DNA of 63,922 bases, filler included, from Octopus bimaculoides (Eukaryota): NCBI RefSeq assembly GCF_001194135.2. It is 5 parts of 5 records of this genome, joined end to end, with 100 filler letters (N's around TTAATTAATTAA, not from the genome) between each part and the next. Parts side by side here need not be neighbours in the genome. Positions count along the whole stretch, not along the records: positions 24,090 to 54,628 come from NC_069002.1; 4 more parts are not named here. One strand, given 5' to 3'. This document shows positions 24,090-53,410 of the stretch, in pieces (positions within the stretch are counted from its first letter, which is position 1; each line of letters starts with the position of its first letter). A model generated the notes under the pieces. It made no database searches and was not told where the DNA came from. It saw only the letters and a program-made list of their open reading frames with translations. The position numbers were made by a program, and so were the translations under genes.

Positions 24090-24597
24090 TGGTGGTGGCG
24101 TAGATGGAGATGTCATTGGTGGTGGCCATGGTAGTATAGAAGAAGATGGTAGTGGTGGTGATGCAGATGGAAGTGTTGGTGTTAGTGGTGGTGTTGGTGG
24201 TAGTAGTAGCATATGTAGCAGAAGGAAGTACAGCTGTTGATGCCTGTGTTGAAGTACAGCAGATACACAAGTTGCCAGAATTGCAGTCAATGGCCTAACA
24301 ACAACAACAACAACAACAACAATGTAGTGATACGGGAGAAGCCACAACCCACAAACATCACAAAACATATACATACACACACAGACAAACACTCGCTTAT
24401 ACATACACACACACACACACACGGAAATCCTCTCAGCTCATTGATAAGGGAACTGTCTCATTAAATACGCAAACTGTGTTAGCTTTCACTTTCAACAAAC
24501 TCAGCATCTGGTTTTGTAAACAATATTATATATACATGCATACATAAATATATATATATATATGCATGTGTATAAATATGTGTGAATGCCTGTGTGC

Positions 24598-24632
<35 letters not shown>

Positions 24633-25194
24633 GAGAGAGAGAGTGGGGGGAGACTGTGTTACCTGAAATGGAGGTGAACACCTTTCTTCATGTGATCGGT
24701 TTGAAAGATTGTTAAGACATGAGGATATTTTTTCCTACTTTTTGTAGCATGAAACCAAAGGTAGCCTTAATTCATAAATAAATTATATCCACTACTGTAG
24801 TGTTAAGCACTCATTTTCATTGTTCAACTTTTATTTGTATATATANNNNNNNNNNNNNNNNNNNNNNNNNNNNNNNNNNNNNNNNNNNNNNNNNNNNNNN
24901 NNNNNNNNNNNNNNNNNNNNNNNNNNNNNNNNNNNNNNNNNNNNNNNNNNNNNNNNNNNNNNNNNNNNNNNNNNNNNNNNNNNNNNNNNNNNNNNNNNNN
25001 NNNNNNNNNNNNNNNNNNNNNNNNNNNNNNNNNNNNNNNNNNNNNNNNNNNNNNNNNNNNNNNNNNNNNNNNNNNNNNNNNNNNNNNNNNNNNNNNNNNN
25101 NNNNNNNNNNNNNNNNNNNNNNNNNNNNNNNNNNNNNNNNNNNNNNNNNNNNNNNNNNNNNNNNNNNNNNNNNNNNNNNNNNNNNNNNNNNNNT

Positions 25195-25290
25195 ATAGTA
25201 GAAGACACTTGCCCAAAGTGCCATGCAGTAGGACTGAACCCGGAACCATGTGGTTGGGAAGCAAGCTTCTTACCACACAGCCACACCTGT
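25195..25290 (-). mobile_element. SINE family B head
   Basis: Consensus with CpG decay. Confidence 0.88.
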
Positions 25291-25884
25291 GTCTATGTAT
25301 ACAGTTACATACATACACTTAATGCTAAATGTACATAAACGCAATATAAAACCAAGACTTAAACAGGAAACTAAAGAAAAGAAAACAGTTGCAAATACAC
25401 ACATACACACACACATATATATACATTTATATATGTATATCCATACATCCACCCACATCCATAAGTTCATATACACAAATATCTATGCATATATGATGTA
25501 TACACACACACACATCATCTCCACTGTGTATATCTGTATAAACTAAGTGTGTGTGTATGATTAAATACCTATATGTGTATCCATGTATATATATGCACAT
25601 AGATGAGTGCATGTGCACACGAGTCTGTGTGTGTGTGTGTGTGTATGTTTATAAGTGTGCATATATTCTACATAATCTCCTTTATCTTTTCTATGTTGTG
25701 CACACATTCTAGCCATGTGTATATGTACTCCCTGCCAAAACTCTGGAGACTTATGCCAAATCGCAATAACAGGAAACTTCAGATTTTTTCAAGAAAACCA
25801 GTGGAACAGGAAATGACAATGATGATGACGATGCAGATAACAATGGTGATGGTGATGATGATGATGATGATGATGATGATGTTT

Positions 25885-26090
25885 CTTTTATCTTTTACTT
25901 GTTTCAGTTATTAGGCTGTGGCCATGCTGGGGCACCGCCTTGAAGAATTTTGAGTCGAATGAATCGATCCCAGTACTTATTTCTTTTTAAAGCCTGATAC
26001 TTATTCTATCGGTCACTTTTGCTGAACTGCTAAGTTAAGGGAACATAAAAAAACTAGCACCAGTTGTCAAGCAGTGGTAGGGGAACAAAC
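25885..26090 (-). mobile_element. SINE family B 3' part
   Basis: ttttacttgtttcagt.attag.ctg.ggccatgctggggcacc... Confidence 0.88.
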
Positions 26091-26376
26091 ATAGACAGAA
26101 AGACACACACACACACACACATGCACATATATATATATATGTAAAGCAAAATATGAGTTAGAGGTTATGCAACCATCTAAGGGATAAATGTATCCGTAGG
26201 CACTACTGGTGTATTACCTTACTATGTATAGTCCTGGCTAAAAGATATACAGGAGTTGGTAATTTAAAGGTAAAACCATGGTTTAATATATACAGAAAAG
26301 AAAAGAAATGGAGCAATAATTAACAATGAGAAGTTAATCATTGGTATTAGAAAGTCATAGTTTAATTGTAGTTCAG

Positions 26377-26461
26377 AACCATTTACAGCTGTTTCTGTTT
26401 ATCAAATCGAGGTAAATTTGCACTTATCTCATTCAACTTAACAAACATCGTCAGAATGATT
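26377..26461 (-). ncRNA. Type I minimal hammerhead ribozyme, intact core
   Basis: Minus strand reads aaucauu-CUGACGA-stem II (15 contiguous pairs, 4 G.U, 22-nt loop)-GAAA-C-AGCU-G-UA^-aaugguu. Stem I is 7 bp and loop 3 is a palindromic tetraloop. Predicted cleavage is between 26384 and 26383. Confidence 0.8.
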
Positions 26462-26623
26462 TAGAGAAATATAAATAGGAGGAAAGGAAAAGAAAGGAAA
26501 AGGAAAAAGCAAAGAGAAAAGGAAAAATGTTCGTTAAGTCTTTAGGCTTACATTTTGGGTCCCACATGTGTGTACGTTTCCTTAATTAGATGAATGGAGC
26601 AGTAAGTGGACAACGCACGTTAA

Positions 26624-26655
<32 letters not shown>

Positions 26656-26984
26656 GAATGTTATTTGAGCGAGATTGTTGAGATTTCTTCATTTGCTCAA
26701 GATGTGTTTGTTACTCGTTTATTTCATGAATAGCAGATAGTTTATCAGACTAACAGCAAGTTGTCAGATTGACAGATTGGCAAATTGTGAGGTTGTCAGA
26801 TTGTCAAACTCACAAGAGATTGACAGATTGTCAGGCTAAACAACATTGTCAGATTGTCTGAGAATATATTGAGGTATTTACAATAATCAATTGCTATCAA
26901 GATAGCAATTGACATAAAGTAAATGAAAGACACACAGACAGACAATGAAACAGAATTTCCAGACTGAACCAAAAAAGTAGGTTA

Positions 26985-26996
26985 GCAAAATAAAGA

Positions 26997-27027
<31 letters not shown>

Positions 27028-27945
27028 GATGATGATGATGATTGTGATGAGGTTGGTGATGATGATAGTGATAATGATGATGGCAATGAAGATGATGATG
27101 AGGATGATGATAGTGAAGATGCTGATGATGATGATGATGTCGACAGAAAGTAGAAAGTCATCCAATCCCACCCGGATATGCAAGACTAATTATAATAATT
27201 TCTGAATTAATAAAACTAATTACCCAGAACATTGTTAACGGTGTTGATAATCTAGAGATGCATAGAGAAGTGGTGGTGGTGGTGATGGTCCCCATCGTCG
27301 TGGTTGTGGTAGAGTCGCTACTAAGTATAAACTTAGTAGTGGGGTGGTGGTGATGGTGGGAGTGGGGGTGATACTGATAGTGCTGGTTGTGATGGTGGTG
27401 GTGATGGTAATGGTTGCGGTGGTGCTACTGGTAAAGATGGTGCTGGCTGAGATGGCGACGGTAGTAGTGGTGATGGTGGTGTGGTGGTGGTGCCAGATGA
27501 AATGTGCTGATGTGACAGTGACCAGAACTATTATCAAACTACCAAAGGCATTAAACCCATTGACCATTCCATATATTTCAGACACAGTCTACCCTGGACT
27601 ACATTACCCAATGTGCAAGGTTTGAGTGAGATTAGGCTGCTGTTTCTAGCATGTCATGTAACCATGCCAAGGCCTCCTCTGACATGATTGATTTTGATGG
27701 CAGTGGTGGTGGTGGGGGTGATACTGGTAACGGTGGGGGTGGTAGTGTTGATGGAGATGTTGATAATCGTATGATGAAGGAGTGGGGACTGGGGTGGTAG
27801 CAGAGATGATGAAGATGATGATGGTGATGACTGCAGGTGTAGGAATGTTAGTGATGTTGATGCTGGTGATGATGGTGGTGATGATGATGATGATGGTGAT
27901 GGTGGTGGTGATGGTGATGGTAGTGATGGTGGTAGTGGTAGGAGG
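26985..27945. repeat. Degenerate (GAT)n/(GGT)n low-complexity tracts
   Basis: Seen directly; source of the spurious M/V-rich ORFs. Confidence 0.9.
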
Positions 27946-28043
27946 GGTACATTGTTCTAATGCACTCAGTAACCCCTACGTCAATGATTCTTCTTCTCTG
28001 CAGAGCAGACAGAGAAGAGTTAGCAATTATGCCATGGCTCCTT

Positions 28044-28087
<44 letters not shown>

Positions 28088-28756
28088 ATGATGTTGCTTT
28101 TATGATGTGTGTGGGGAGGGGTTATGTATCAGAATGCAAGGAGTGCGGGTTGGGGATACACGAAGGTGATCAGAGGGTACCTATTTTTGAAATTAGGCTA
28201 ACTTTGTGAAGTACAACACTAGCACCACCGCCACCACCACTACCACCACTGCTGCTGCCACCACCACCATGCCTGTCTCCTCACTTCCACACAGCACTTC
28301 TTCAGACCACCATGCCCCACCTACAGATTGGATTAGAGAGGGGAAGAAAGAGAGAGAGAGAGAGAGAGAGCAGTAGACAGAGCTATAAGAGAGAGAGAGA
28401 GAAAGACAGGGAGAAGAAGAGTAAATGGAGCAAACAGGGGTAGGGAGGGAGAGAGAGACTGAATGGCATCTTCTACTACTACTACTACCCCAACAATATG
28501 TGTGTGTATAATATAGAGTGCAGTCACCATATTTCATTCTATAATGGCTACCTCTGATGTGCACAGGGTTACATGATCGGACTGTTACCTAATGCTCTGT
28601 TGAGCCACTGGTGTGAAACCTATTGATAAGATCAGCTGTAATGGATATTTAATACTATACACTTCGATTAATATAATTAATACATATATGTATGTATATA
28701 TATATATGAGAAAATGAGATGACAAAGGAATAAACAATTATCTTATGACCTTCATT

Positions 28757-28856
28757 AGCTTACAGCTGTTTCTTCTGGGAGATGCAGTGGACACATAGCT
28801 GAGTGCCTGAGCAACACCTTATAGCTTCATCAGAGCCTTGGACTGAAACATATGTA
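28757..28856 (-). ncRNA. Degenerate hammerhead element (core and stem III intact, stem II broken)
   Basis: ggcu-CUGAUGA...GAAACAGCUGUA^-agcu on minus, with the same GAAACAGCTGTA as 26384-26395. An inverted GAAACATATGTA lies on plus at 28845-28856. Confidence 0.45.
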
Positions 28857-29482
28857 TTTTGAGTACTACACTAGGTTATTAGCCTTGCAATGCCTAAGTG
28901 AAACACACACACACACAAACACACACACATATGTATATATGTACTGGAAAATTAAGATAAACACAAGTATAAATTATTAGTTGCTACATATGTATCACCA
29001 TTGCAGATGTATGGAACTAAATATTGTATGTTCCAAGTGCAGCTGGATGCTTAACCACAACGGATCATCGAGGGAGCAATTTATCACACTTTGTTGCAGA
29101 GATCTGATATCTTAATTTTACCCCATGTATGATCTGTATATCATAACTAGTAACACTGCTAAGTACAGAGGTTGACTAAGCACTGTACTAAAAGCTGATT
29201 GGATAACGATAAGCTATGTGGAGCTCCGACTCATACAGTAGAAACCACACAGCTGACTATACGCATGCAATGTGTGCGCGTGTGAACTGTGTGGTGTGAT
29301 TTTCAACAACATAGAAACCCTGCCAAATCAGGCTGGACCCTGATGCAGTTCCCCAGCTTACCAGTTCCGGTCAAACTGTCCAACCCATGCCAGCATGAAA
29401 AGTGGACATTAAATGGTGATGATGATGGTGATGATGAGTATAACACTTGATCAGCTAAGAGATTAAAGATGTTATTTTATTG

Positions 29483-29603
<121 letters not shown>

Positions 29604-29765
29604 ATACACTGATGGACAGATAAATATATAGGCAGATATATAAACAGACAGATAAATAGAGAGAGTGGGAGGGAGGGAGACAGATAGCTAAAGTGACAGA
29701 CAGACATAGATTGACAGACAGACATAGATTGACAGACTGACAGATAAATAGACAGATAGAGATAA

Positions 29766-29808
<43 letters not shown>

Positions 29809-30239
29809 TTTAGTGATATGGAGACAAACAGATAGTCAAGCTATAAAGATAGATATAACATGGCTATATAAACAAAATGTAATTAATCTGAAGTAAATAT
29901 ATATATATACAGGGGGAGACAACCATAAACTTCCTGTCTGGTCAACCGGTGCAAAGGAAGATAGTCCTCCCCCTCCTTTCCCTCCTTTTGAACTCCCACC
30001 TTCACCTGGGGGCAACCACCCAGCCATAGACTACACTCCCCTTCATCTTTCATGTCAAGGACAACAAACAAACGATAGGGGTGGAAATGGGGGTTGACGG
30101 GGTGGGGGTGAGGTGGAATTTAAGGGAAGAAGCAGTGTGGGGTGGATTGAGGAGTGAGGTGAGTGAGGTGAGGTGAGGTGGGAGATTCAGCTGGTTTCAA
30201 TGACTATTAAGGTTCTCCACCCTTTAATATGGTCGGTAC

Positions 30240-30325
30240 CCGCCACCATCACCACAAACATCACCACTATCACAACCACTACTATTACTACTGCAGAAAC
30301 TACCACTTCTACCACCACCACCACC

Positions 30326-30357
<32 letters not shown>

Positions 30358-30690
30358 CACTACTATTACTACTGCAGAAACTACCACTTCTANNNNNNNN
30401 NNNNNNNNNNNNNNNNNNNNNNNNNNNNNNNNNNNNNNNNNNNNNNNNNNNNNNNNNNNNNNNNNNNNNNNNNNNNNNNNNNNNNNNNNNNNNNNNNNNN
30501 NNNNNNNNNNNNNNNNNNNNNNNNNNNNNNNNNNNNNNNNNNNNNNNNNNNNNNNNNNNNNNNNNNNNNNNNNNNNNNNNNNNNNNNNNNNNNNNNNNNN
30601 NNNNNNNNNNNNNNNNNNNNNNNNNNNNNNNNNNNNNNNNNNNNNNNNNNNNNNNNNNNNNNNNNNNNNNACCACTACTACTACTACTAT

Positions 30691-30725
<35 letters not shown>

Positions 30726-31130
30726 TTACTACTACTACCACCACCACCACCACCACCACATCATCATCACTACTGTAACACCACCGATACATTTCACAAC
30801 CACTACTATTATAACCACCGACACCACCACTACTACAACCACAACCACATCCACCACACTGCCTTAACCATCACTGCCACCATCACGATAAACATCACTG
30901 CTATCACAATCGCATCATCATCACTACTGCAACACCAACACCGCATTTTACAACCACCAGCACTAACACTACCGCCACATCACCATCACTACACTACCAC
31001 CATCATCACTGCAATGATCACTACCATTGCCATAACTATCACAGGCACCAACTGTCACACATGCCACTGTCATCACACCACCACTACTACATCACTAGCA
31101 CCATACCACTGCTACTACATCACTAGTTGG
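30240..31130. repeat. Degenerate (ACC)/(ACT)/(ATC)n tract with gap
   Basis: Seen directly. Confidence 0.92.
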
Positions 31131-31528
31131 CACTAAAGTATGTCACACCGACTATATGACACATTACATGATTACATGTCCTGTCATCTGGCTGACCATT
31201 GGGGCACCACTAATGACATTGCGACAAATCCTGTAATATTTATACACAAGCTCAAGGCTACAAATTTGAGAGAGTAATTAGGCAATTAAATGAATCTGGT
31301 ACTGGACGAGGACCAGTGTTTTATTTGTAACAGTTCTGAAAGAATGAAAGGAGATGGGTTTTGAATTAGGAATAAAAAGAGTCAGAACAAACACCACAAG
31401 GTATTTTCTCTGATGCTCCAATGATTTTTGCCAATCGACTGGAACAACATAGATCCCAGAAGATGAAGTGTAAAGCCAGCAACTCAGTGAAATATTTCTA
31501 GTGAGAAGGATGTAAAAATGTGACTTAC

Positions 31529-31602
31529 CGGCGATAGTGTAATCCATGTCAAACCCGAGATATTTCACTTTCTGCATGAGGAGACCCCGGTTCACAAAGA
31601 TC
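31529..31602 (-). CDS. NT5C2: NT5C2-like exon encoding (R)IFVNRGLLMQKVKYLGFDMDYTIA, HAD motif I DxDxT
   Basis: Acceptor tttctatttcAG, donor G|GTAAGT, 74 nt. The peptide matches the cN-II family signature [24 protein letters not shown]. Confidence 0.93.
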
Positions 31603-33124: not shown

Positions 33125-33290
33125 ACAGGAATGGTTGAGTGGTTAGGGTCCTTACTTGGTCACCATGTGGTTCCAGGTTCAGTCCCATTGAATAGCACCT
33201 TGGGCAAATGTCTTCTGCAATAAATCTCAGGACTGACCGACGCATTGTGAAAGAATTTGGTAGATGAAAACTGAGCAGAAGCCCACCATA
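33125..33290 (+). mobile_element. SINE family B head, decayed
   Basis: ggttc.agtccca...caccttgggcaa.tgtcttct. Confidence 0.8.
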
Positions 33291-35999: not shown

Positions 36000-36105
36000 T
36001 AGGTGTAGATGTGGACATGAGGGTAAGAAGCTTGCTTCTCAACCATGAGGTTTTGGGTTCTGTCCCACTGTCTGGCAGCTTAGGCAAGTGCCTTCTATTA
36101 TAGAC
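36000..36105 (+). mobile_element. SINE family B head, decayed
   Basis: ggtaagaagcttgcttctcaacc...ggcaagtgccttct. Confidence 0.75.
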
Positions 36106-39739: not shown

Positions 39740-39930
39740 TCTTTCATCTTTCACTTGTTCCAGTCATTGAACTGCGACCATGCTGGAGCACCGCCTCCAA
39801 GAGTTTAGTTGAACAAATCGACCCCAGTAATGATATATGGATATTATTCATCTCTTCTGTTGAATTGTCAATTTACGAGGGACATAAACAAACCGACACG
39901 ACACCAGTTGTCAAGTGATGGTGGGAAACA
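39740..39930 (-). mobile_element. SINE family B 3' part
   Basis: Consensus match. Confidence 0.8.
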
Positions 39931-39948
39931 AACATAAACACACACGTA

Positions 39949-42719: not shown

Positions 42720-42900
42720 TCTTTCATCTTTTATTTGCTTCAGCCATTAGGCTGAGGCCACAATGGAGCACTGCCTTGGATAATTTTTAGTCAGACGTAG
42801 CAACCCCAGCACTTACTTTTGTTTTTTAAAGTCTGGTACTCATTCTATTGGTCTCCTTTGCTGAACCACTAAGTTATGGTAACGTAAACACACCAACACA
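42720..42900 (-). mobile_element. SINE family B 3' part
   Basis: Consensus match. Confidence 0.8.
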
Positions 42901-49369: not shown

Positions 49370-49580
49370 TGCAGGCACAAGGCCTAGAATGTTGGGGAAA
49401 GCGAAATAATCGATTACATCGAACTCCATTGTTCAATTAGTACTTCATTTTATCATACTCAAATGAATAAAAAAAAACAACAAAGTCATCCTCGGCGGAA
49501 TTTGAGCTCAAAACATCAAGACTGACAGAGTGCTACTAAGCATTTTGTCCGGTGTGCTAACGTTTCTGCCAGCTTGCCGT
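49370..49580 (-). mobile_element. SINE family A
   Basis: Consensus match. Confidence 0.85.
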
Positions 49581-49734
49581 CAATAATAAATGCCAAAACG
49601 AATTTCTGTGTGTCAGTGTGTCACACAGTGCCCCCCCCCCTATCTCACTATTCAATGACACTTCTTCTACTCCTCTTGTTGGGAAGAGAGTAATAGGCAT
49701 AGAGACGGTGAGGGCGGTAGAGTAGATTGACAGT

Positions 49735-49850
49735 TGCAGAAGCTCTACAGGACATTCTATTCCAATCTCCTCCAACCATTTGTCTATGTCTTTGCTTACA
49801 GTTCCCAATGCACCATTAATTATAGGCACAACCTTTACAATTTTCATCCT
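49735..49850 (-). mobile_element. R4/Dong-like LINE fragment, endonuclease C-terminus
   Basis: MKIVKVVPIINGALGTVSKDIDKWLEEIGIECPVELLQ. Confidence 0.8.
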
Positions 49851-49881
49851 CATCATCATCACCATCATTATAATTATTATC

Positions 49882-50100
49882 AAGGTGGTTAACTGACAGA
49901 ATTTTTGGTACGTTCGGAGAAGTTGCCTAGCAACGTTTCTTCTGTCTCTTTACATTCTGACATCAAATGCCTCCGAGGTCAAATTTGCCTTTTCGCCGTC
50001 GATAATTTAAGTACCAGTTGAAAACTGGGGTCGATGTAATCGTCTTGTCTTTTACCTCAAAAATGGCTGACTTTGTACTAAAATTAGAAATAAATTATTT
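49882..50100 (+). mobile_element. SINE family A, degenerate
   Basis: Consensus match. Confidence 0.75.
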
Positions 50101-50243: not shown

Positions 50244-50545
50244 ATACGTCATGACAATGTGGCAAGAACGATCCATTGAGAACTGTCGAAAACACGGCCG
50301 GCAAAGAGCAATGACGTGGTATCAGCAAACCCCAGAAGGAGTCACCGAAAATGAGAATTGCAAAATTCTGTGGGATGCAATGATCCAGTACGATCACCTG
50401 ACCAGGCATCGGAAACTGGACATTGTTGTGGTGAATAAAAAACAAAGAACATGTATGATAATCGACGTAGCATGCCCCGGGGACAACAGGATCAATGTGA
50501 AAGAAGAAAAAATAAACATCTATAACGATTCGAAGAGGGAAATCC
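50244..50545 (+). mobile_element. R4/Dong-like LINE fragment, endonuclease domain
   Basis: RHDNVAR (frameshifted), WY..TPEGVTENENCKILWD, LDIVVVNKK..CMIIDVACPGD..KEEK..Y..KREI. Confidence 0.85.
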
Positions 50546-50755
50546 TTTCTATTAAAGGCACAAAGCCTGAAATTTTGCGGGAGGGGACTAGTCGATTACA
50601 TCGACCGCAGTGTTTCACTGGTACTTAATTTATCGACCCCGAAAGGATAAAAGTCAAAATCGACCTCGGCAGAATTTGAACTCAGAACGTAACGACAGGC
50701 GAAATACCCGCAAAGCATTTTGTCCGGCGCGCTAACGATTCTGCCAGCTCACCGC
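50545..50755 (-). mobile_element. SINE family A, young, lacking tail
   Basis: Near-consensus copy; its 3' end abuts the R4 fragment. Confidence 0.9.
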
Positions 50756-53194: not shown

Positions 53195-53410
53195 TTACAA
53201 AATCTATATAATATTCCAGGTTCAATTCCACTGCGTGGCATCTTGGGAAAGTATCTTCTACTATAGCCTCGAGCCGACCAAAGCCTTGTGAGTGGATTTG
53301 GTAGACGGAAACTGAAAGAAGCCCGTCATGTGTGTGTGTGTGTGTGTACATATACATGCATGTATGTATTTGTGTGTCTGTGTTTGTCCCTCCCATCATC
53401 GCTTGACAAT
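53195..53410 (+). mobile_element. SINE family B, partial
   Basis: Consensus match. Confidence 0.88.

What the first reader, a model, noticed from the sequence alone, without database searches (positions are those of the whole stretch)
26377..26461. Structurally complete type I hammerhead ribozyme in sense orientation downstream of the NT5C2 catalytic-motif exon
Seen: the minus strand gives stem I aaucauu/aaugguu (7 bp), core CUGACGA, a 15-pair stem II, GAAA, and a 2-bp stem III closed by the palindromic loop AGCU, with cleavage triplet GUA. Established: minimal type I hammerheads with a palindromic loop 3 are typical of Penelope-like elements and non-autonomous retrozymes, and they often cleave as dimers. 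Inference: this copy could cut the NT5C2 pre-mRNA intron, because it is on the gene strand in the same contig. Pair 10.1-11.1 is U-A rather than the usual G-C, which may reduce the rate.
Basis: partly seen in the sequence, partly recalled or inferred. Interest (0 to 1): 0.85.

Follow-up and report, generated by a model that had tools for sequence, protein, structure and literature searches.

The report
Orphan dimer-type hammerhead motif in intron
A complete, non-random hammerhead ribozyme motif of the weak-helix-III kind carried by Penelope-like retroelements and retrozymes lies alone in an intron of a 5'-nucleotidase gene, and it is most likely an inactive retroelement relic rather than a regulator of that gene.

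Summary
On the minus strand at 26461..26377 there is a type I hammerhead motif. It has a 7-bp stem I, core CUGACGA, a 15-bp stem II, GAAA, a 2-bp stem III with loop AGCU, and cleavage triplet GUA.

It is the only such motif in the piece, and chance does not explain it. None of 325 Mb of random sequence, 3780 scrambled-core decoys on the real sequence, or 120 core-string matches in viral and metagenome DNA gave comparable stems.

It is atypical and probably weak. Pair 10.1-11.1 is U-A, stem I has a single G-C pair, and there is no loop-loop contact. Rfam hammerhead models do not detect it. The predicted monomer fold pairs C3-U4-G5 with loop 3 (P about 0.98), leaving stem III at P about 0.0005. 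ACAGCUGU is a perfect 8-nt palindrome, so an active fold would need a second copy.

No second copy, tandem repeat or Penelope-like ORF is present in the 30 kb available. The motif lies 5.07 kb downstream of a cN-II/NT5C2-like exon on the same strand.

Best reading: a solitary relic of a Penelope-like-element or retrozyme-type hammerhead. Cleavage of the pre-mRNA is unsupported and unlikely. I found no homologues, so covariation could not be tested. This is a new member of a known kind, of low to moderate interest.

The parts
26377..26461 (-). Whole type I hammerhead motif (85 nt)
   Evidence: Read directly. It is the only descriptor hit in the piece.
26455..26461 (-). Stem I, 5' strand, AAUCAUU
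   Evidence: Pairs with 26377-26383: 7 bp, 1 G.U and 1 G-C. Duplex energy is only -2.8 kcal/mol.
26448..26454 (-). Catalytic core C3-A9, CUGACGA
   Evidence: In the predicted monomer MFE, C3-U4-G5 pair with C15.2-A-G of loop 3 (P about 0.98).
26396..26447 (-). Stem II hairpin: 52 nt, 15 contiguous pairs including 4 G.U; pair 10.1-11.1 is U-A
   Evidence: Hairpin energy is -13.8 kcal/mol. The G.U pairs make the structure specific to the minus strand.
26393..26395 (-). Core G12 A13 A14
26385..26392 (-). Helix III / loop 3, ACAGCUGU. A perfect 8-nt palindrome: A15.1-U16.1 and C15.2-G16.2 closing loop AGCU
   Evidence: The intermolecular 8-bp duplex is -11.1 kcal/mol, and no stable hairpin forms on its own.
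26384..26384 (-). A17. The predicted scissile bond lies between 26384 and 26383 (triplet GUA)
   Evidence: Position mapping. Cleavage itself was not tested.
26377..26383 (-). Stem I, 3' strand, AAUGGUU
31529..31602 (-). Exon of a cytosolic 5'-nucleotidase II (NT5C2-like) gene encoding ..IFVNRGLLMQKVKYLGFDMDYTIA. Acceptor tttcag|G, donor G|GTAAGT
   Evidence: tblastn against a recalled human NT5C2 sequence: aa 32-58, 67% identity, E 1.6e-7. Pfam PF05761 scores 27.1 bits against a cutoff of 28.5, covering profile positions 1-24. Splice sites were read.
26477..26525 (-). Pyrimidine (CTTTY)n microsatellite immediately 5' of the motif. A similar run lies at 26293-26312
   Evidence: 18 nt, 89% identity between the two runs. 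That this is an insertion into a microsatellite is inference only.

Best explanation
The sequence is a genuine hammerhead-type motif by descent. It is a solitary ('solo') copy of the dimer-dependent type I hammerheads that Penelope-like elements and animal non-LTR retrozymes carry. It was left in sense orientation in the intron that follows the catalytic-motif exon of a cN-II/NT5C2-like gene.

Shown:
- All invariant core positions are present, and three helices are in the right register.
- Helix III is an 8-nt palindrome.
- The stems are far beyond chance.
- The structure is specific to the gene strand.

Inferred:
- As a single copy in a pre-mRNA it folds into an extended hairpin that buries C3-U4-G5, so it cleaves little or not at all.
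- An active conformation would need a second copy to build the 8-bp intermolecular helix III. No such copy is nearby.
- The weak A/U-rich stem I, the U10.1-A11.1 pair and the lack of loop-loop contacts lower the expected activity further.
- It therefore most likely has no effect on the host transcript.
For: - Motif and coordinates.
- Non-randomness: 0.01 loose hits per simulated piece. No hit at I>=6 and II>=6 in 325 Mb of random sequence. Only 2 weaker loci from 3780 scrambled-core decoys on the real sequence. None of 120 core-string matches in viral and metagenome DNA had both stems.
- Strand specificity: -19.4 kcal/mol, z -2.77 on the minus strand against -11.3, z -1.12 on the plus strand. 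All 5 wobble pairs are G.U on the minus strand.
- Dimer-type helix III: ACAGCUGU duplex -11.1 kcal/mol.
- Monomer misfold: stem III P about 0.0005, core-loop 3 pairing P about 0.98, hammerhead-compatible fraction about 5e-5.
- Solitary state: no second core-bearing candidate among the 13 CTGANGA sites, no sequence copy of 26150-26620 in the piece, and no tandem repeat.
- Literature: a short palindromic helix III, dimer dependence and low in vitro activity are described for Penelope-like-element hammerheads (PMC4209133, PMC6765202). Solo retrozyme monomers are dispersed along chromosomes (bioRxiv 10.64898/2026.07.22.740005).
Against: - No homologue could be retrieved, so descent from a repeat family and covariation are untested.
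- No Penelope-like RT or GIY-YIG ORF was seen in the piece.
- Rfam hammerhead models give no hit, even at E<=10.
- Stem II (15 bp) is much longer than the 6-8 bp reported for Penelope-like-element hammerheads. G10.1-C11.1 and the extra nucleotide after A9 are absent.
- Thermodynamic predictions ignore tertiary structure, co-transcriptional folding and protein chaperones.
- Eight N gaps, and the piece edge 2.3 kb downstream, could hide a partner copy.
Confidence: 0.6

Rival explanations
1. It is one unit of an intact or recently active Penelope-like element or retrozyme. The partner hammerhead lies in an assembly gap or outside the piece, so the locus can form the double hammerhead and be processed.
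For: The palindromic helix III implies a partner. There are N gaps at 24846-25193 and 30393-30670, and the piece ends at 24090. Penelope-like elements are known to assemble poorly (PMC8557442). A pyrimidine microsatellite lies on both sides of a 164-nt unit.
Against: There is no repeat of the segment within 1.2 kb downstream or 3.9 kb upstream of contiguous sequence. No RT or EN remnant was found. The 164-nt unit, folded as a circle, is only 56% paired with z -2.2, so it is not rod-like.
Confidence: 0.15
2. It is a chance coincidence. A pre-existing A/U-rich hairpin happens to be flanked by CUGANGA and GAAA plus short complementary flanks.
For: Relaxed minimal descriptors are known to give many false positives (PMC6155905). 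Rfam models do not recognise it. The region is A/T-rich and full of simple repeats. Pair 10.1-11.1 is non-canonical. The number of windows screened upstream is unknown.
Against: The random rate extrapolates to about 3e-8 per Mb for I>=7 and II>=15. Given a hairpin, the flanks have a probability of roughly 4e-9 (my estimate from base composition). The decoy test on the real sequence gave nothing comparable. The palindromic loop and the strand-specific G.U pairs are extra unforced features.
Confidence: 0.1
3. It is a domesticated intronic ribozyme that cleaves the NT5C2-like pre-mRNA. This would be analogous to the amniote intronic hammerheads in RECK, CTCL and DTNB.
For: It lies on the same strand as the exon, 5.07 kb downstream. 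The core is complete. Conserved intronic type I hammerheads are a precedent (PMC6155905).
Against: The monomer fold disfavours the active state. There are no tertiary loop contacts, a weak stem I and a U-A pair at 10.1-11.1. In a 281-nt context even stem II has a competing upstream partner. Retrozyme-type elements are reported as depleted from introns in the genomes mapped in a vertebrate survey, which suggests they are deleterious rather than co-opted (bioRxiv 10.64898/2026.07.22.740005). Conservation could not be tested.
Confidence: 0.07
4. It is another structured RNA, for example a miRNA-like intronic hairpin, whose extended stem mimics a hammerhead.
For: The MFE of the 85 nt is one long imperfect hairpin of about 31 pairs.
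Against: There is no Rfam match at E<=10 apart from three noise hits. The apical loop is only 4 nt. This reading would leave the full set of hammerhead core nucleotides as coincidence.
Confidence: 0.03

Closest known systems
Hammerheads of Penelope-like elements (min-HHRs and variants; Cervera & de la Pena 2014, PMC4209133; Lunse et al. 2016, cited in PMC6765202)
   Same: Type I topology. Very short helix III with a palindromic 15.2-16.2 pair and loop 3, implying action as a dimer. No loop 1-loop 2 tertiary contacts. Helix II longer than in canonical hammerheads. Animal genome. Flanking microsatellite.
   Different: No pseudo-LTR, RT or GIY-YIG context, and no second copy nearby. U10.1-A11.1 instead of the highly conserved G-C. 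No unpaired nucleotide between A9 and 10.1. Helix II is 15 bp against 6-8 bp, and helix I is 7 bp against 2-5 bp.
Animal non-LTR retrozymes (Cervera & de la Pena 2020, PMC7229834) and their solo monomers (bioRxiv 10.64898/2026.07.22.740005)
   Same: Type I hammerhead with a 2-bp helix III capped by a tetraloop (as in HHR_Amex2 and invertebrate motifs). Low G+C. A possible unit of about 164 nt, close to the 170-400 nt range. Solo monomers are known to be dispersed.
   Different: Not in a tandem array. The unit is not strongly self-paired. The canonical loop-loop interactions and 4-bp helix II are absent. The location is intronic, whereas retrozymes were reported as depleted from introns.
Conserved intronic hammerheads of amniotes (Rfam HH9/HH10; RECK, CTCL, DTNB)
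   Same: Type I motif in sense orientation within an intron of a protein-coding gene.
   Different: Those are canonical, with tertiary contacts, active as monomers and ultraconserved. Here no Rfam model matches, the monomer fold is unfavourable and conservation is unknown.
Newt satellite 2 / Schistosoma Sm-alpha hammerheads
   Same: Repeat-borne type I hammerheads. The newt motif also has a weak helix III and cleaves as a dimer.
   Different: Those occur in tandem or SINE-like repeats with pol III features. Neither a tandem array nor a tRNA-like part is present here.

Membership tests
Hammerhead ribozyme (general, type I) | Invariant core C3 U4 G5 A6 N7 G8 A9 / G12 A13 A14 / A15.1-U16.1 / H17 | tested here: met
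   CUGACGA, GAA, A15.1-U16.1 and A17 were read directly.
Hammerhead ribozyme (general, type I) | Three helices in register around the core, with helices II and III closed by loops and helix I open | tested here: met
   I = 7 bp, II = 15 bp, III = 2 bp. Helix III is not thermodynamically stable as a monomer.
Hammerhead ribozyme (general, type I) | G10.1-C11.1 pair (highly conserved, not absolute) | tested here: not met
   The pair is U-A.
Hammerhead ribozyme (general, type I) | Match to a curated covariance model (Rfam Hammerhead_1, _3, _II, HH9, HH10) | tested here: not met
   No gathering-score hit in the piece. No hammerhead hit at E<=10 in a 241-nt search. The 52-nt helix II insertion is a likely reason (inference).
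Hammerhead ribozyme (general, type I) | Site-specific self-cleavage after H17 | not testable with these tools
   Needs transcription and cleavage assays, or mapping of RNA ends.
Hammerhead ribozyme (general, type I) | Covariation of stems among homologues | not testable with these tools
   No homologue was retrievable: the protein routes failed, the metagenome and viral pattern scans gave only chance matches, and no animal genome collection was available.
Penelope-like-element hammerhead | Located in a pseudo-LTR flanking an RT/GIY-YIG ORF | tested here: not met
   No such ORF or Pfam domain was found among ORFs and stop-free segments of the piece. Decayed remnants cannot be excluded.
Penelope-like-element hammerhead | Second copy in tandem or in proximity (<50 kb) | tested here: not met
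   The motif is the only one in 30.5 kb and there is no sequence copy. Only 2.3 kb downstream and 28 kb upstream were available, with 8 gaps.
Penelope-like-element hammerhead | Palindromic 15.2-16.2 pair and loop 3 | tested here: met
   ACAGCUGU is a perfect palindrome.
Penelope-like-element hammerhead | Unpaired nucleotide between A9 and 10.1 | tested here: not met
   The U after A9 pairs with the A before G12. Treating it as a bulge would leave an extra A before G12.
Animal non-LTR retrozyme | Tandem repeats of 150-450 bp, each with a type I hammerhead | tested here: not met
   No direct repeat of the segment.
Animal non-LTR retrozyme | Unit RNA highly self-paired (circRNA) | tested here: inconclusive
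   The putative 164-nt unit, folded as a circle, is 56% paired with z -2.2. The unit boundaries are a guess.
Conserved intronic hammerhead (HH9/HH10-like) | Conservation in the orthologous intron across species, and canonical tertiary contacts | not testable with these tools
   No orthologous locus was obtainable. No Rfam HH9/HH10 match.

The most novel reading that the evidence does not exclude
The motif is a lineage-specific, domesticated intronic hammerhead. It is conserved in the orthologous NT5C2 intron of related species and cleaves the pre-mRNA, perhaps assisted by a chaperone or by pairing of two nascent transcripts through the palindromic helix III. That would tune cN-II expression, as an invertebrate counterpart of the amniote intronic hammerheads.
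Probability: 0.04. Interest if true: 0.7.

Novelty: new member of a known kind. Interest (0 to 1): 0.27.

Why it matters
If the best explanation holds, this is one more dispersed retroelement-type hammerhead in an invertebrate genome. It would show that such motifs, with an unusually long helix II and a U-A pair at 10.1-11.1, occur in this lineage and escape Rfam models. That is of modest use for repeat annotation and for descriptor design. It would matter more only if the motif proved conserved and active in the host intron. That would extend ribozyme-mediated pre-mRNA processing beyond amniotes.

Tried and rejected
- **Rfam.** The gathering-score scan of the whole piece and a permissive scan of 241 nt gave no hammerhead. 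The three E>=3 hits (RefA1, HOTAIR_2, SAM-SAH) are noise.
- **Orthologous or paralogous loci through the protein collection.**
  - A chimeric exon query returned only vertebrate exon fragments. That was my design error: the vertebrate half of the query dominated.
  - Exact look-ups of two window ORFs were not on record.
  - A concatenation of stop-free translations around the motif gave nothing among 2026 candidates.
  - A retroelement-like ORF gave nothing.
  - The collection evidently lacks this genome.
- **Pattern scans.** A near-exact pattern in metagenomes gave 0 hits. Looser core plus helix III patterns gave 55 viral stretches (56 matches) and 64 metagenome stretches, none with hammerhead stems. 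These served as real-DNA negative controls.
- **A degenerate partner copy.** I searched by relaxed core scan and by blastn within the piece and found none.
- **Penelope-like ORFs.** None were found.
- **Retrozyme-like rod structure of a putative 164-nt unit.** Not convincing.
- **tRNA-like SINE head.** None found.
- **Trans double-hammerhead energy.** It cannot be evaluated with a nested-structure model.
- **Literature.** Supplementary consensus sequences of cephalopod Penelope-like elements are not held, and Lunse et al. is not held.
- **Organism.** Simple-repeat richness and SINE-like strings remind me of an octopus genome, but this rests on memory only and no tool confirmed it.

Full report
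**1. Observation**

The minus strand between 26461 and 26377 reads AAUCAUU-CUGACGA-[52-nt hairpin]-GAA-ACAGCUGU-A-AAUGGUU. An independent descriptor scan required CUGANGA, helix II, GAAA, helix III closed by A15.1-U16.1, H17 and helix I. It recovers exactly this interval, with helix I = 7 bp, helix II = 15 contiguous bp and helix III = 2 bp. This is the only hit on either strand of 24090-54628.

Position mapping:
- C3-A9 at 26454-26448.
- Helix II at 26447-26396.
- G12-A14 at 26395-26393.
- The palindrome ACAGCUGU at 26392-26385.
- A17 at 26384, so the predicted scissile bond is 26384|26383.
- Pair 10.1-11.1 is U-A.

**2. Is it more than chance?**

- 400 first-order Markov simulations of the piece gave 0.01 loose hits per piece, and none with I>=6 and II>=6.
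- In 325 Mb of composition-matched random sequence the loose descriptor (I>=5, II>=3) hit 0.13 times per Mb. The rate fell about threefold per added base pair, and nothing reached I>=6 with II>=6. Extrapolated to I>=7 and II>=15, this is about 3e-8 per Mb (inference from that slope).
- Real DNA has more hairpins than random DNA, so I also ran 3780 descriptors with scrambled cores of identical composition on the real piece. They hit only two other loci, both weaker: I=5/II=8 and I=5/II=4.
- As a further real-DNA control, the strings CTGANGA-N40-60-GAAACAGCTGTA and CTGANGAT-N38-58-AGAAACAGCTGTA matched 56 times in viral contigs and 64 times in metagenome contigs. No match had both stems; the best was I=3, II=5.
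- The structure is strand-specific. The minus-strand RNA folds at -19.4 kcal/mol (z -2.77) and the plus-strand RNA at -11.3 (z -1.12). This is because all five wobble pairs are G.U on the minus strand.

I conclude that the motif is not a coincidence. It reflects an RNA-level structure on the gene strand.

**3. Surroundings**

The gene:
- The only coding feature of the host gene in the piece is a 74-nt exon at 31602..31529 on the minus strand, with acceptor tttcag|G and donor G|GTAAGT.
- It encodes ..IFVNRGLLMQKVKYLGFDMDYTIA.
- It matches residues 32-58 of human NT5C2 as I recalled it (67% identity, E 1.6e-7).
- It also matches the first 24 positions of Pfam PF05761 (27.1 bits, just under the 28.5 cutoff because the match is so short).
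- No later NT5C2 exon lies in 24090-31528. The motif is therefore 5,068 nt downstream of the donor site on the same strand. Its intronic status is inferred.

The motif's own neighbourhood:
- The segment 26150-26620 has no other copy in the piece.
- None of the other 12 CTGANGA sites has a plausible helix II plus GAA.
- The repeat finder shows only microsatellites.
- Two interspersed repeat families do occur in the piece, but the motif belongs to neither.
- No ORF or stop-free segment resembles an RT or a GIY-YIG nuclease.
- A pyrimidine microsatellite lies immediately 5' of the motif (26525-26477). A similar run lies 3' (26312-26293), bracketing about 164 nt. This would fit insertion into a microsatellite, a bias described for Penelope-like elements (PMC8557442), but it is only suggestive.
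- Folded as a circle, that unit is 56% paired with z -2.2. This is not the rod-like shape of retrozyme circRNAs.

**4. How it would work**

The hammerhead fold needs helix III.
- Here helix III is A-U plus C-G closing a tetraloop. In the predicted ensemble of the 85-mer these pairs have P about 0.0005.
- C3-U4-G5 instead pair with C15.2-A-G of loop 3, with P about 0.98.
- Conformations compatible with the hammerhead secondary structure make up about 5e-5 of the ensemble and lie about 5-6 kcal/mol above the MFE.
- ACAGCUGU is a perfect palindrome. Two copies could build an 8-bp helix III of -11.1 kcal/mol.
- This is the architecture for which dimer-dependent cleavage was shown in newt and viroid hammerheads, and proposed and tested for Penelope-like-element hammerheads. 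Their activity is low even as dimers (PMC4209133, PMC6765202). Weak-helix-III retrozyme monomers cleave poorly: 6% in one hour for the axolotl Rtz_331 monomer (PMC7229834).

Further handicaps:
- Helix I has one G-C pair and a duplex energy of -2.8 kcal/mol.
- With a 15-bp helix II and an open 7-bp helix I, no loop 1-loop 2 contact is apparent.
- U10.1-A11.1 replaces the 'highly conserved G10.1-C11.1' (PMC4209133).
- In a 281-nt context an upstream segment (26538-26526) competes for the 5' arm of helix II.

These are nearest-neighbour predictions. They ignore tertiary structure, kinetics and proteins.

My reading is that a lone copy in a long intron is very unlikely to cleave at a useful rate.

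**5. Comparison with known families**

The motif works like, and most resembles, the hammerheads of Penelope-like elements and animal retrozymes. It shares the type I topology, the tiny palindromic helix III, an enlarged helix II and the lack of tertiary contacts.

Membership cannot be claimed.
- Of the four hallmarks listed by Cervera and de la Pena, only the palindromic helix III is met.
- G10.1-C11.1 and the extra nucleotide after A9 are not met.
- Family covariation is untestable here.
- The defining genomic contexts (pseudo-LTR next to an RT/EN ORF; tandem 150-450-bp arrays) are absent within the sequence available.
- Solo retrozyme monomers dispersed along chromosomes are described. The same survey found retrozymes depleted from introns (bioRxiv 10.64898/2026.07.22.740005), so an intronic sense copy is somewhat unusual but not unprecedented.
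- Rfam's hammerhead models (types I, II, III, HH9, HH10) do not detect the motif, probably because of the 52-nt helix II (inference).

**6. What could not be done**

No collection of animal genomes was available. All attempts to reach orthologous or paralogous loci failed. Covariation, copy number, conservation of the intron and the identity of the organism therefore remain open. The simple-repeat richness and SINE-like strings remind me of an octopus genome, but that is memory, not a result.

**7. Verdict**

- The functional inference (cutting the NT5C2 pre-mRNA) is unsupported and disfavoured by the predicted fold and the lack of a partner.
- Most likely (about 0.6) this is a solitary, decayed or intrinsically dimer-dependent retroelement hammerhead with no host function.

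Alternatives:
- A partner hidden in a gap or beyond the piece edge: about 0.15.
- Chance: about 0.1.
- Domesticated intronic ribozyme: about 0.07.
- Another structured RNA: about 0.03.

Novelty: a new member of a known kind. Interest: about 0.27.

Noticed in passing
window 25194-25274; inverted copies at 36022-36102, 33162-33222, 53214-53265: An interspersed repeat family (81-83% identity) containing a B-box-like string 'ggttc(c)gggttcagtcc'. It is probably a tRNA-derived SINE, but ARAGORN calls no tRNA in the piece.
   Followed up: partly
window 25900-26090; copies at 42736-42899 and 39756-39933: A second interspersed repeat family (76% and 68% identity, same orientation), about 290 nt downstream of the hammerhead on the minus strand. 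The hammerhead segment is not part of it.
   Followed up: partly
window 49560-49949 (-) and 50245-50625 (+): Two facing open frames (130 and 127 aa) with motifs such as ILWD..IQ..D....R..DIVVV.K....C.IIDVA.PGD and VVPIINGALGTVSKD. I recall these from the C-terminal region of invertebrate retroelement proteins. There is no Pfam hit and no hit in the protein collection.
   Followed up: partly
window 31529-31602 (-): A 74-nt exon of a cN-II/NT5C2-like gene carrying the DMDYT catalytic motif. It has clean acceptor and donor sites and is the only exon of that gene in the piece.
   Followed up: yes
window 26526-26538 (-): The upstream string CUUAACGAACAUU is complementary to the 5' arm of helix II. 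It replaces the hammerhead hairpin in the MFE of a 281-nt context.
   Followed up: no
window 26313-26340 (-): An 11-bp hairpin (AAUGAUUAAC...GUUAAUUAUU) lies 40-65 nt 3' of the hammerhead. Its 5' arm contains AAUGAUU, an alternative perfect partner for the helix I strand AAUCAUU.
   Followed up: no
piece 24090-54628: There are eight runs of N (10-476 nt; the nearest to the motif is 24846-25193). Microsatellites are dense: (ATC)n, (AC)n, (AT)n, (AG)n, (GATA)n. G+C is about 36-38%. This looks like a draft assembly of a repeat-rich invertebrate genome.
   Followed up: no
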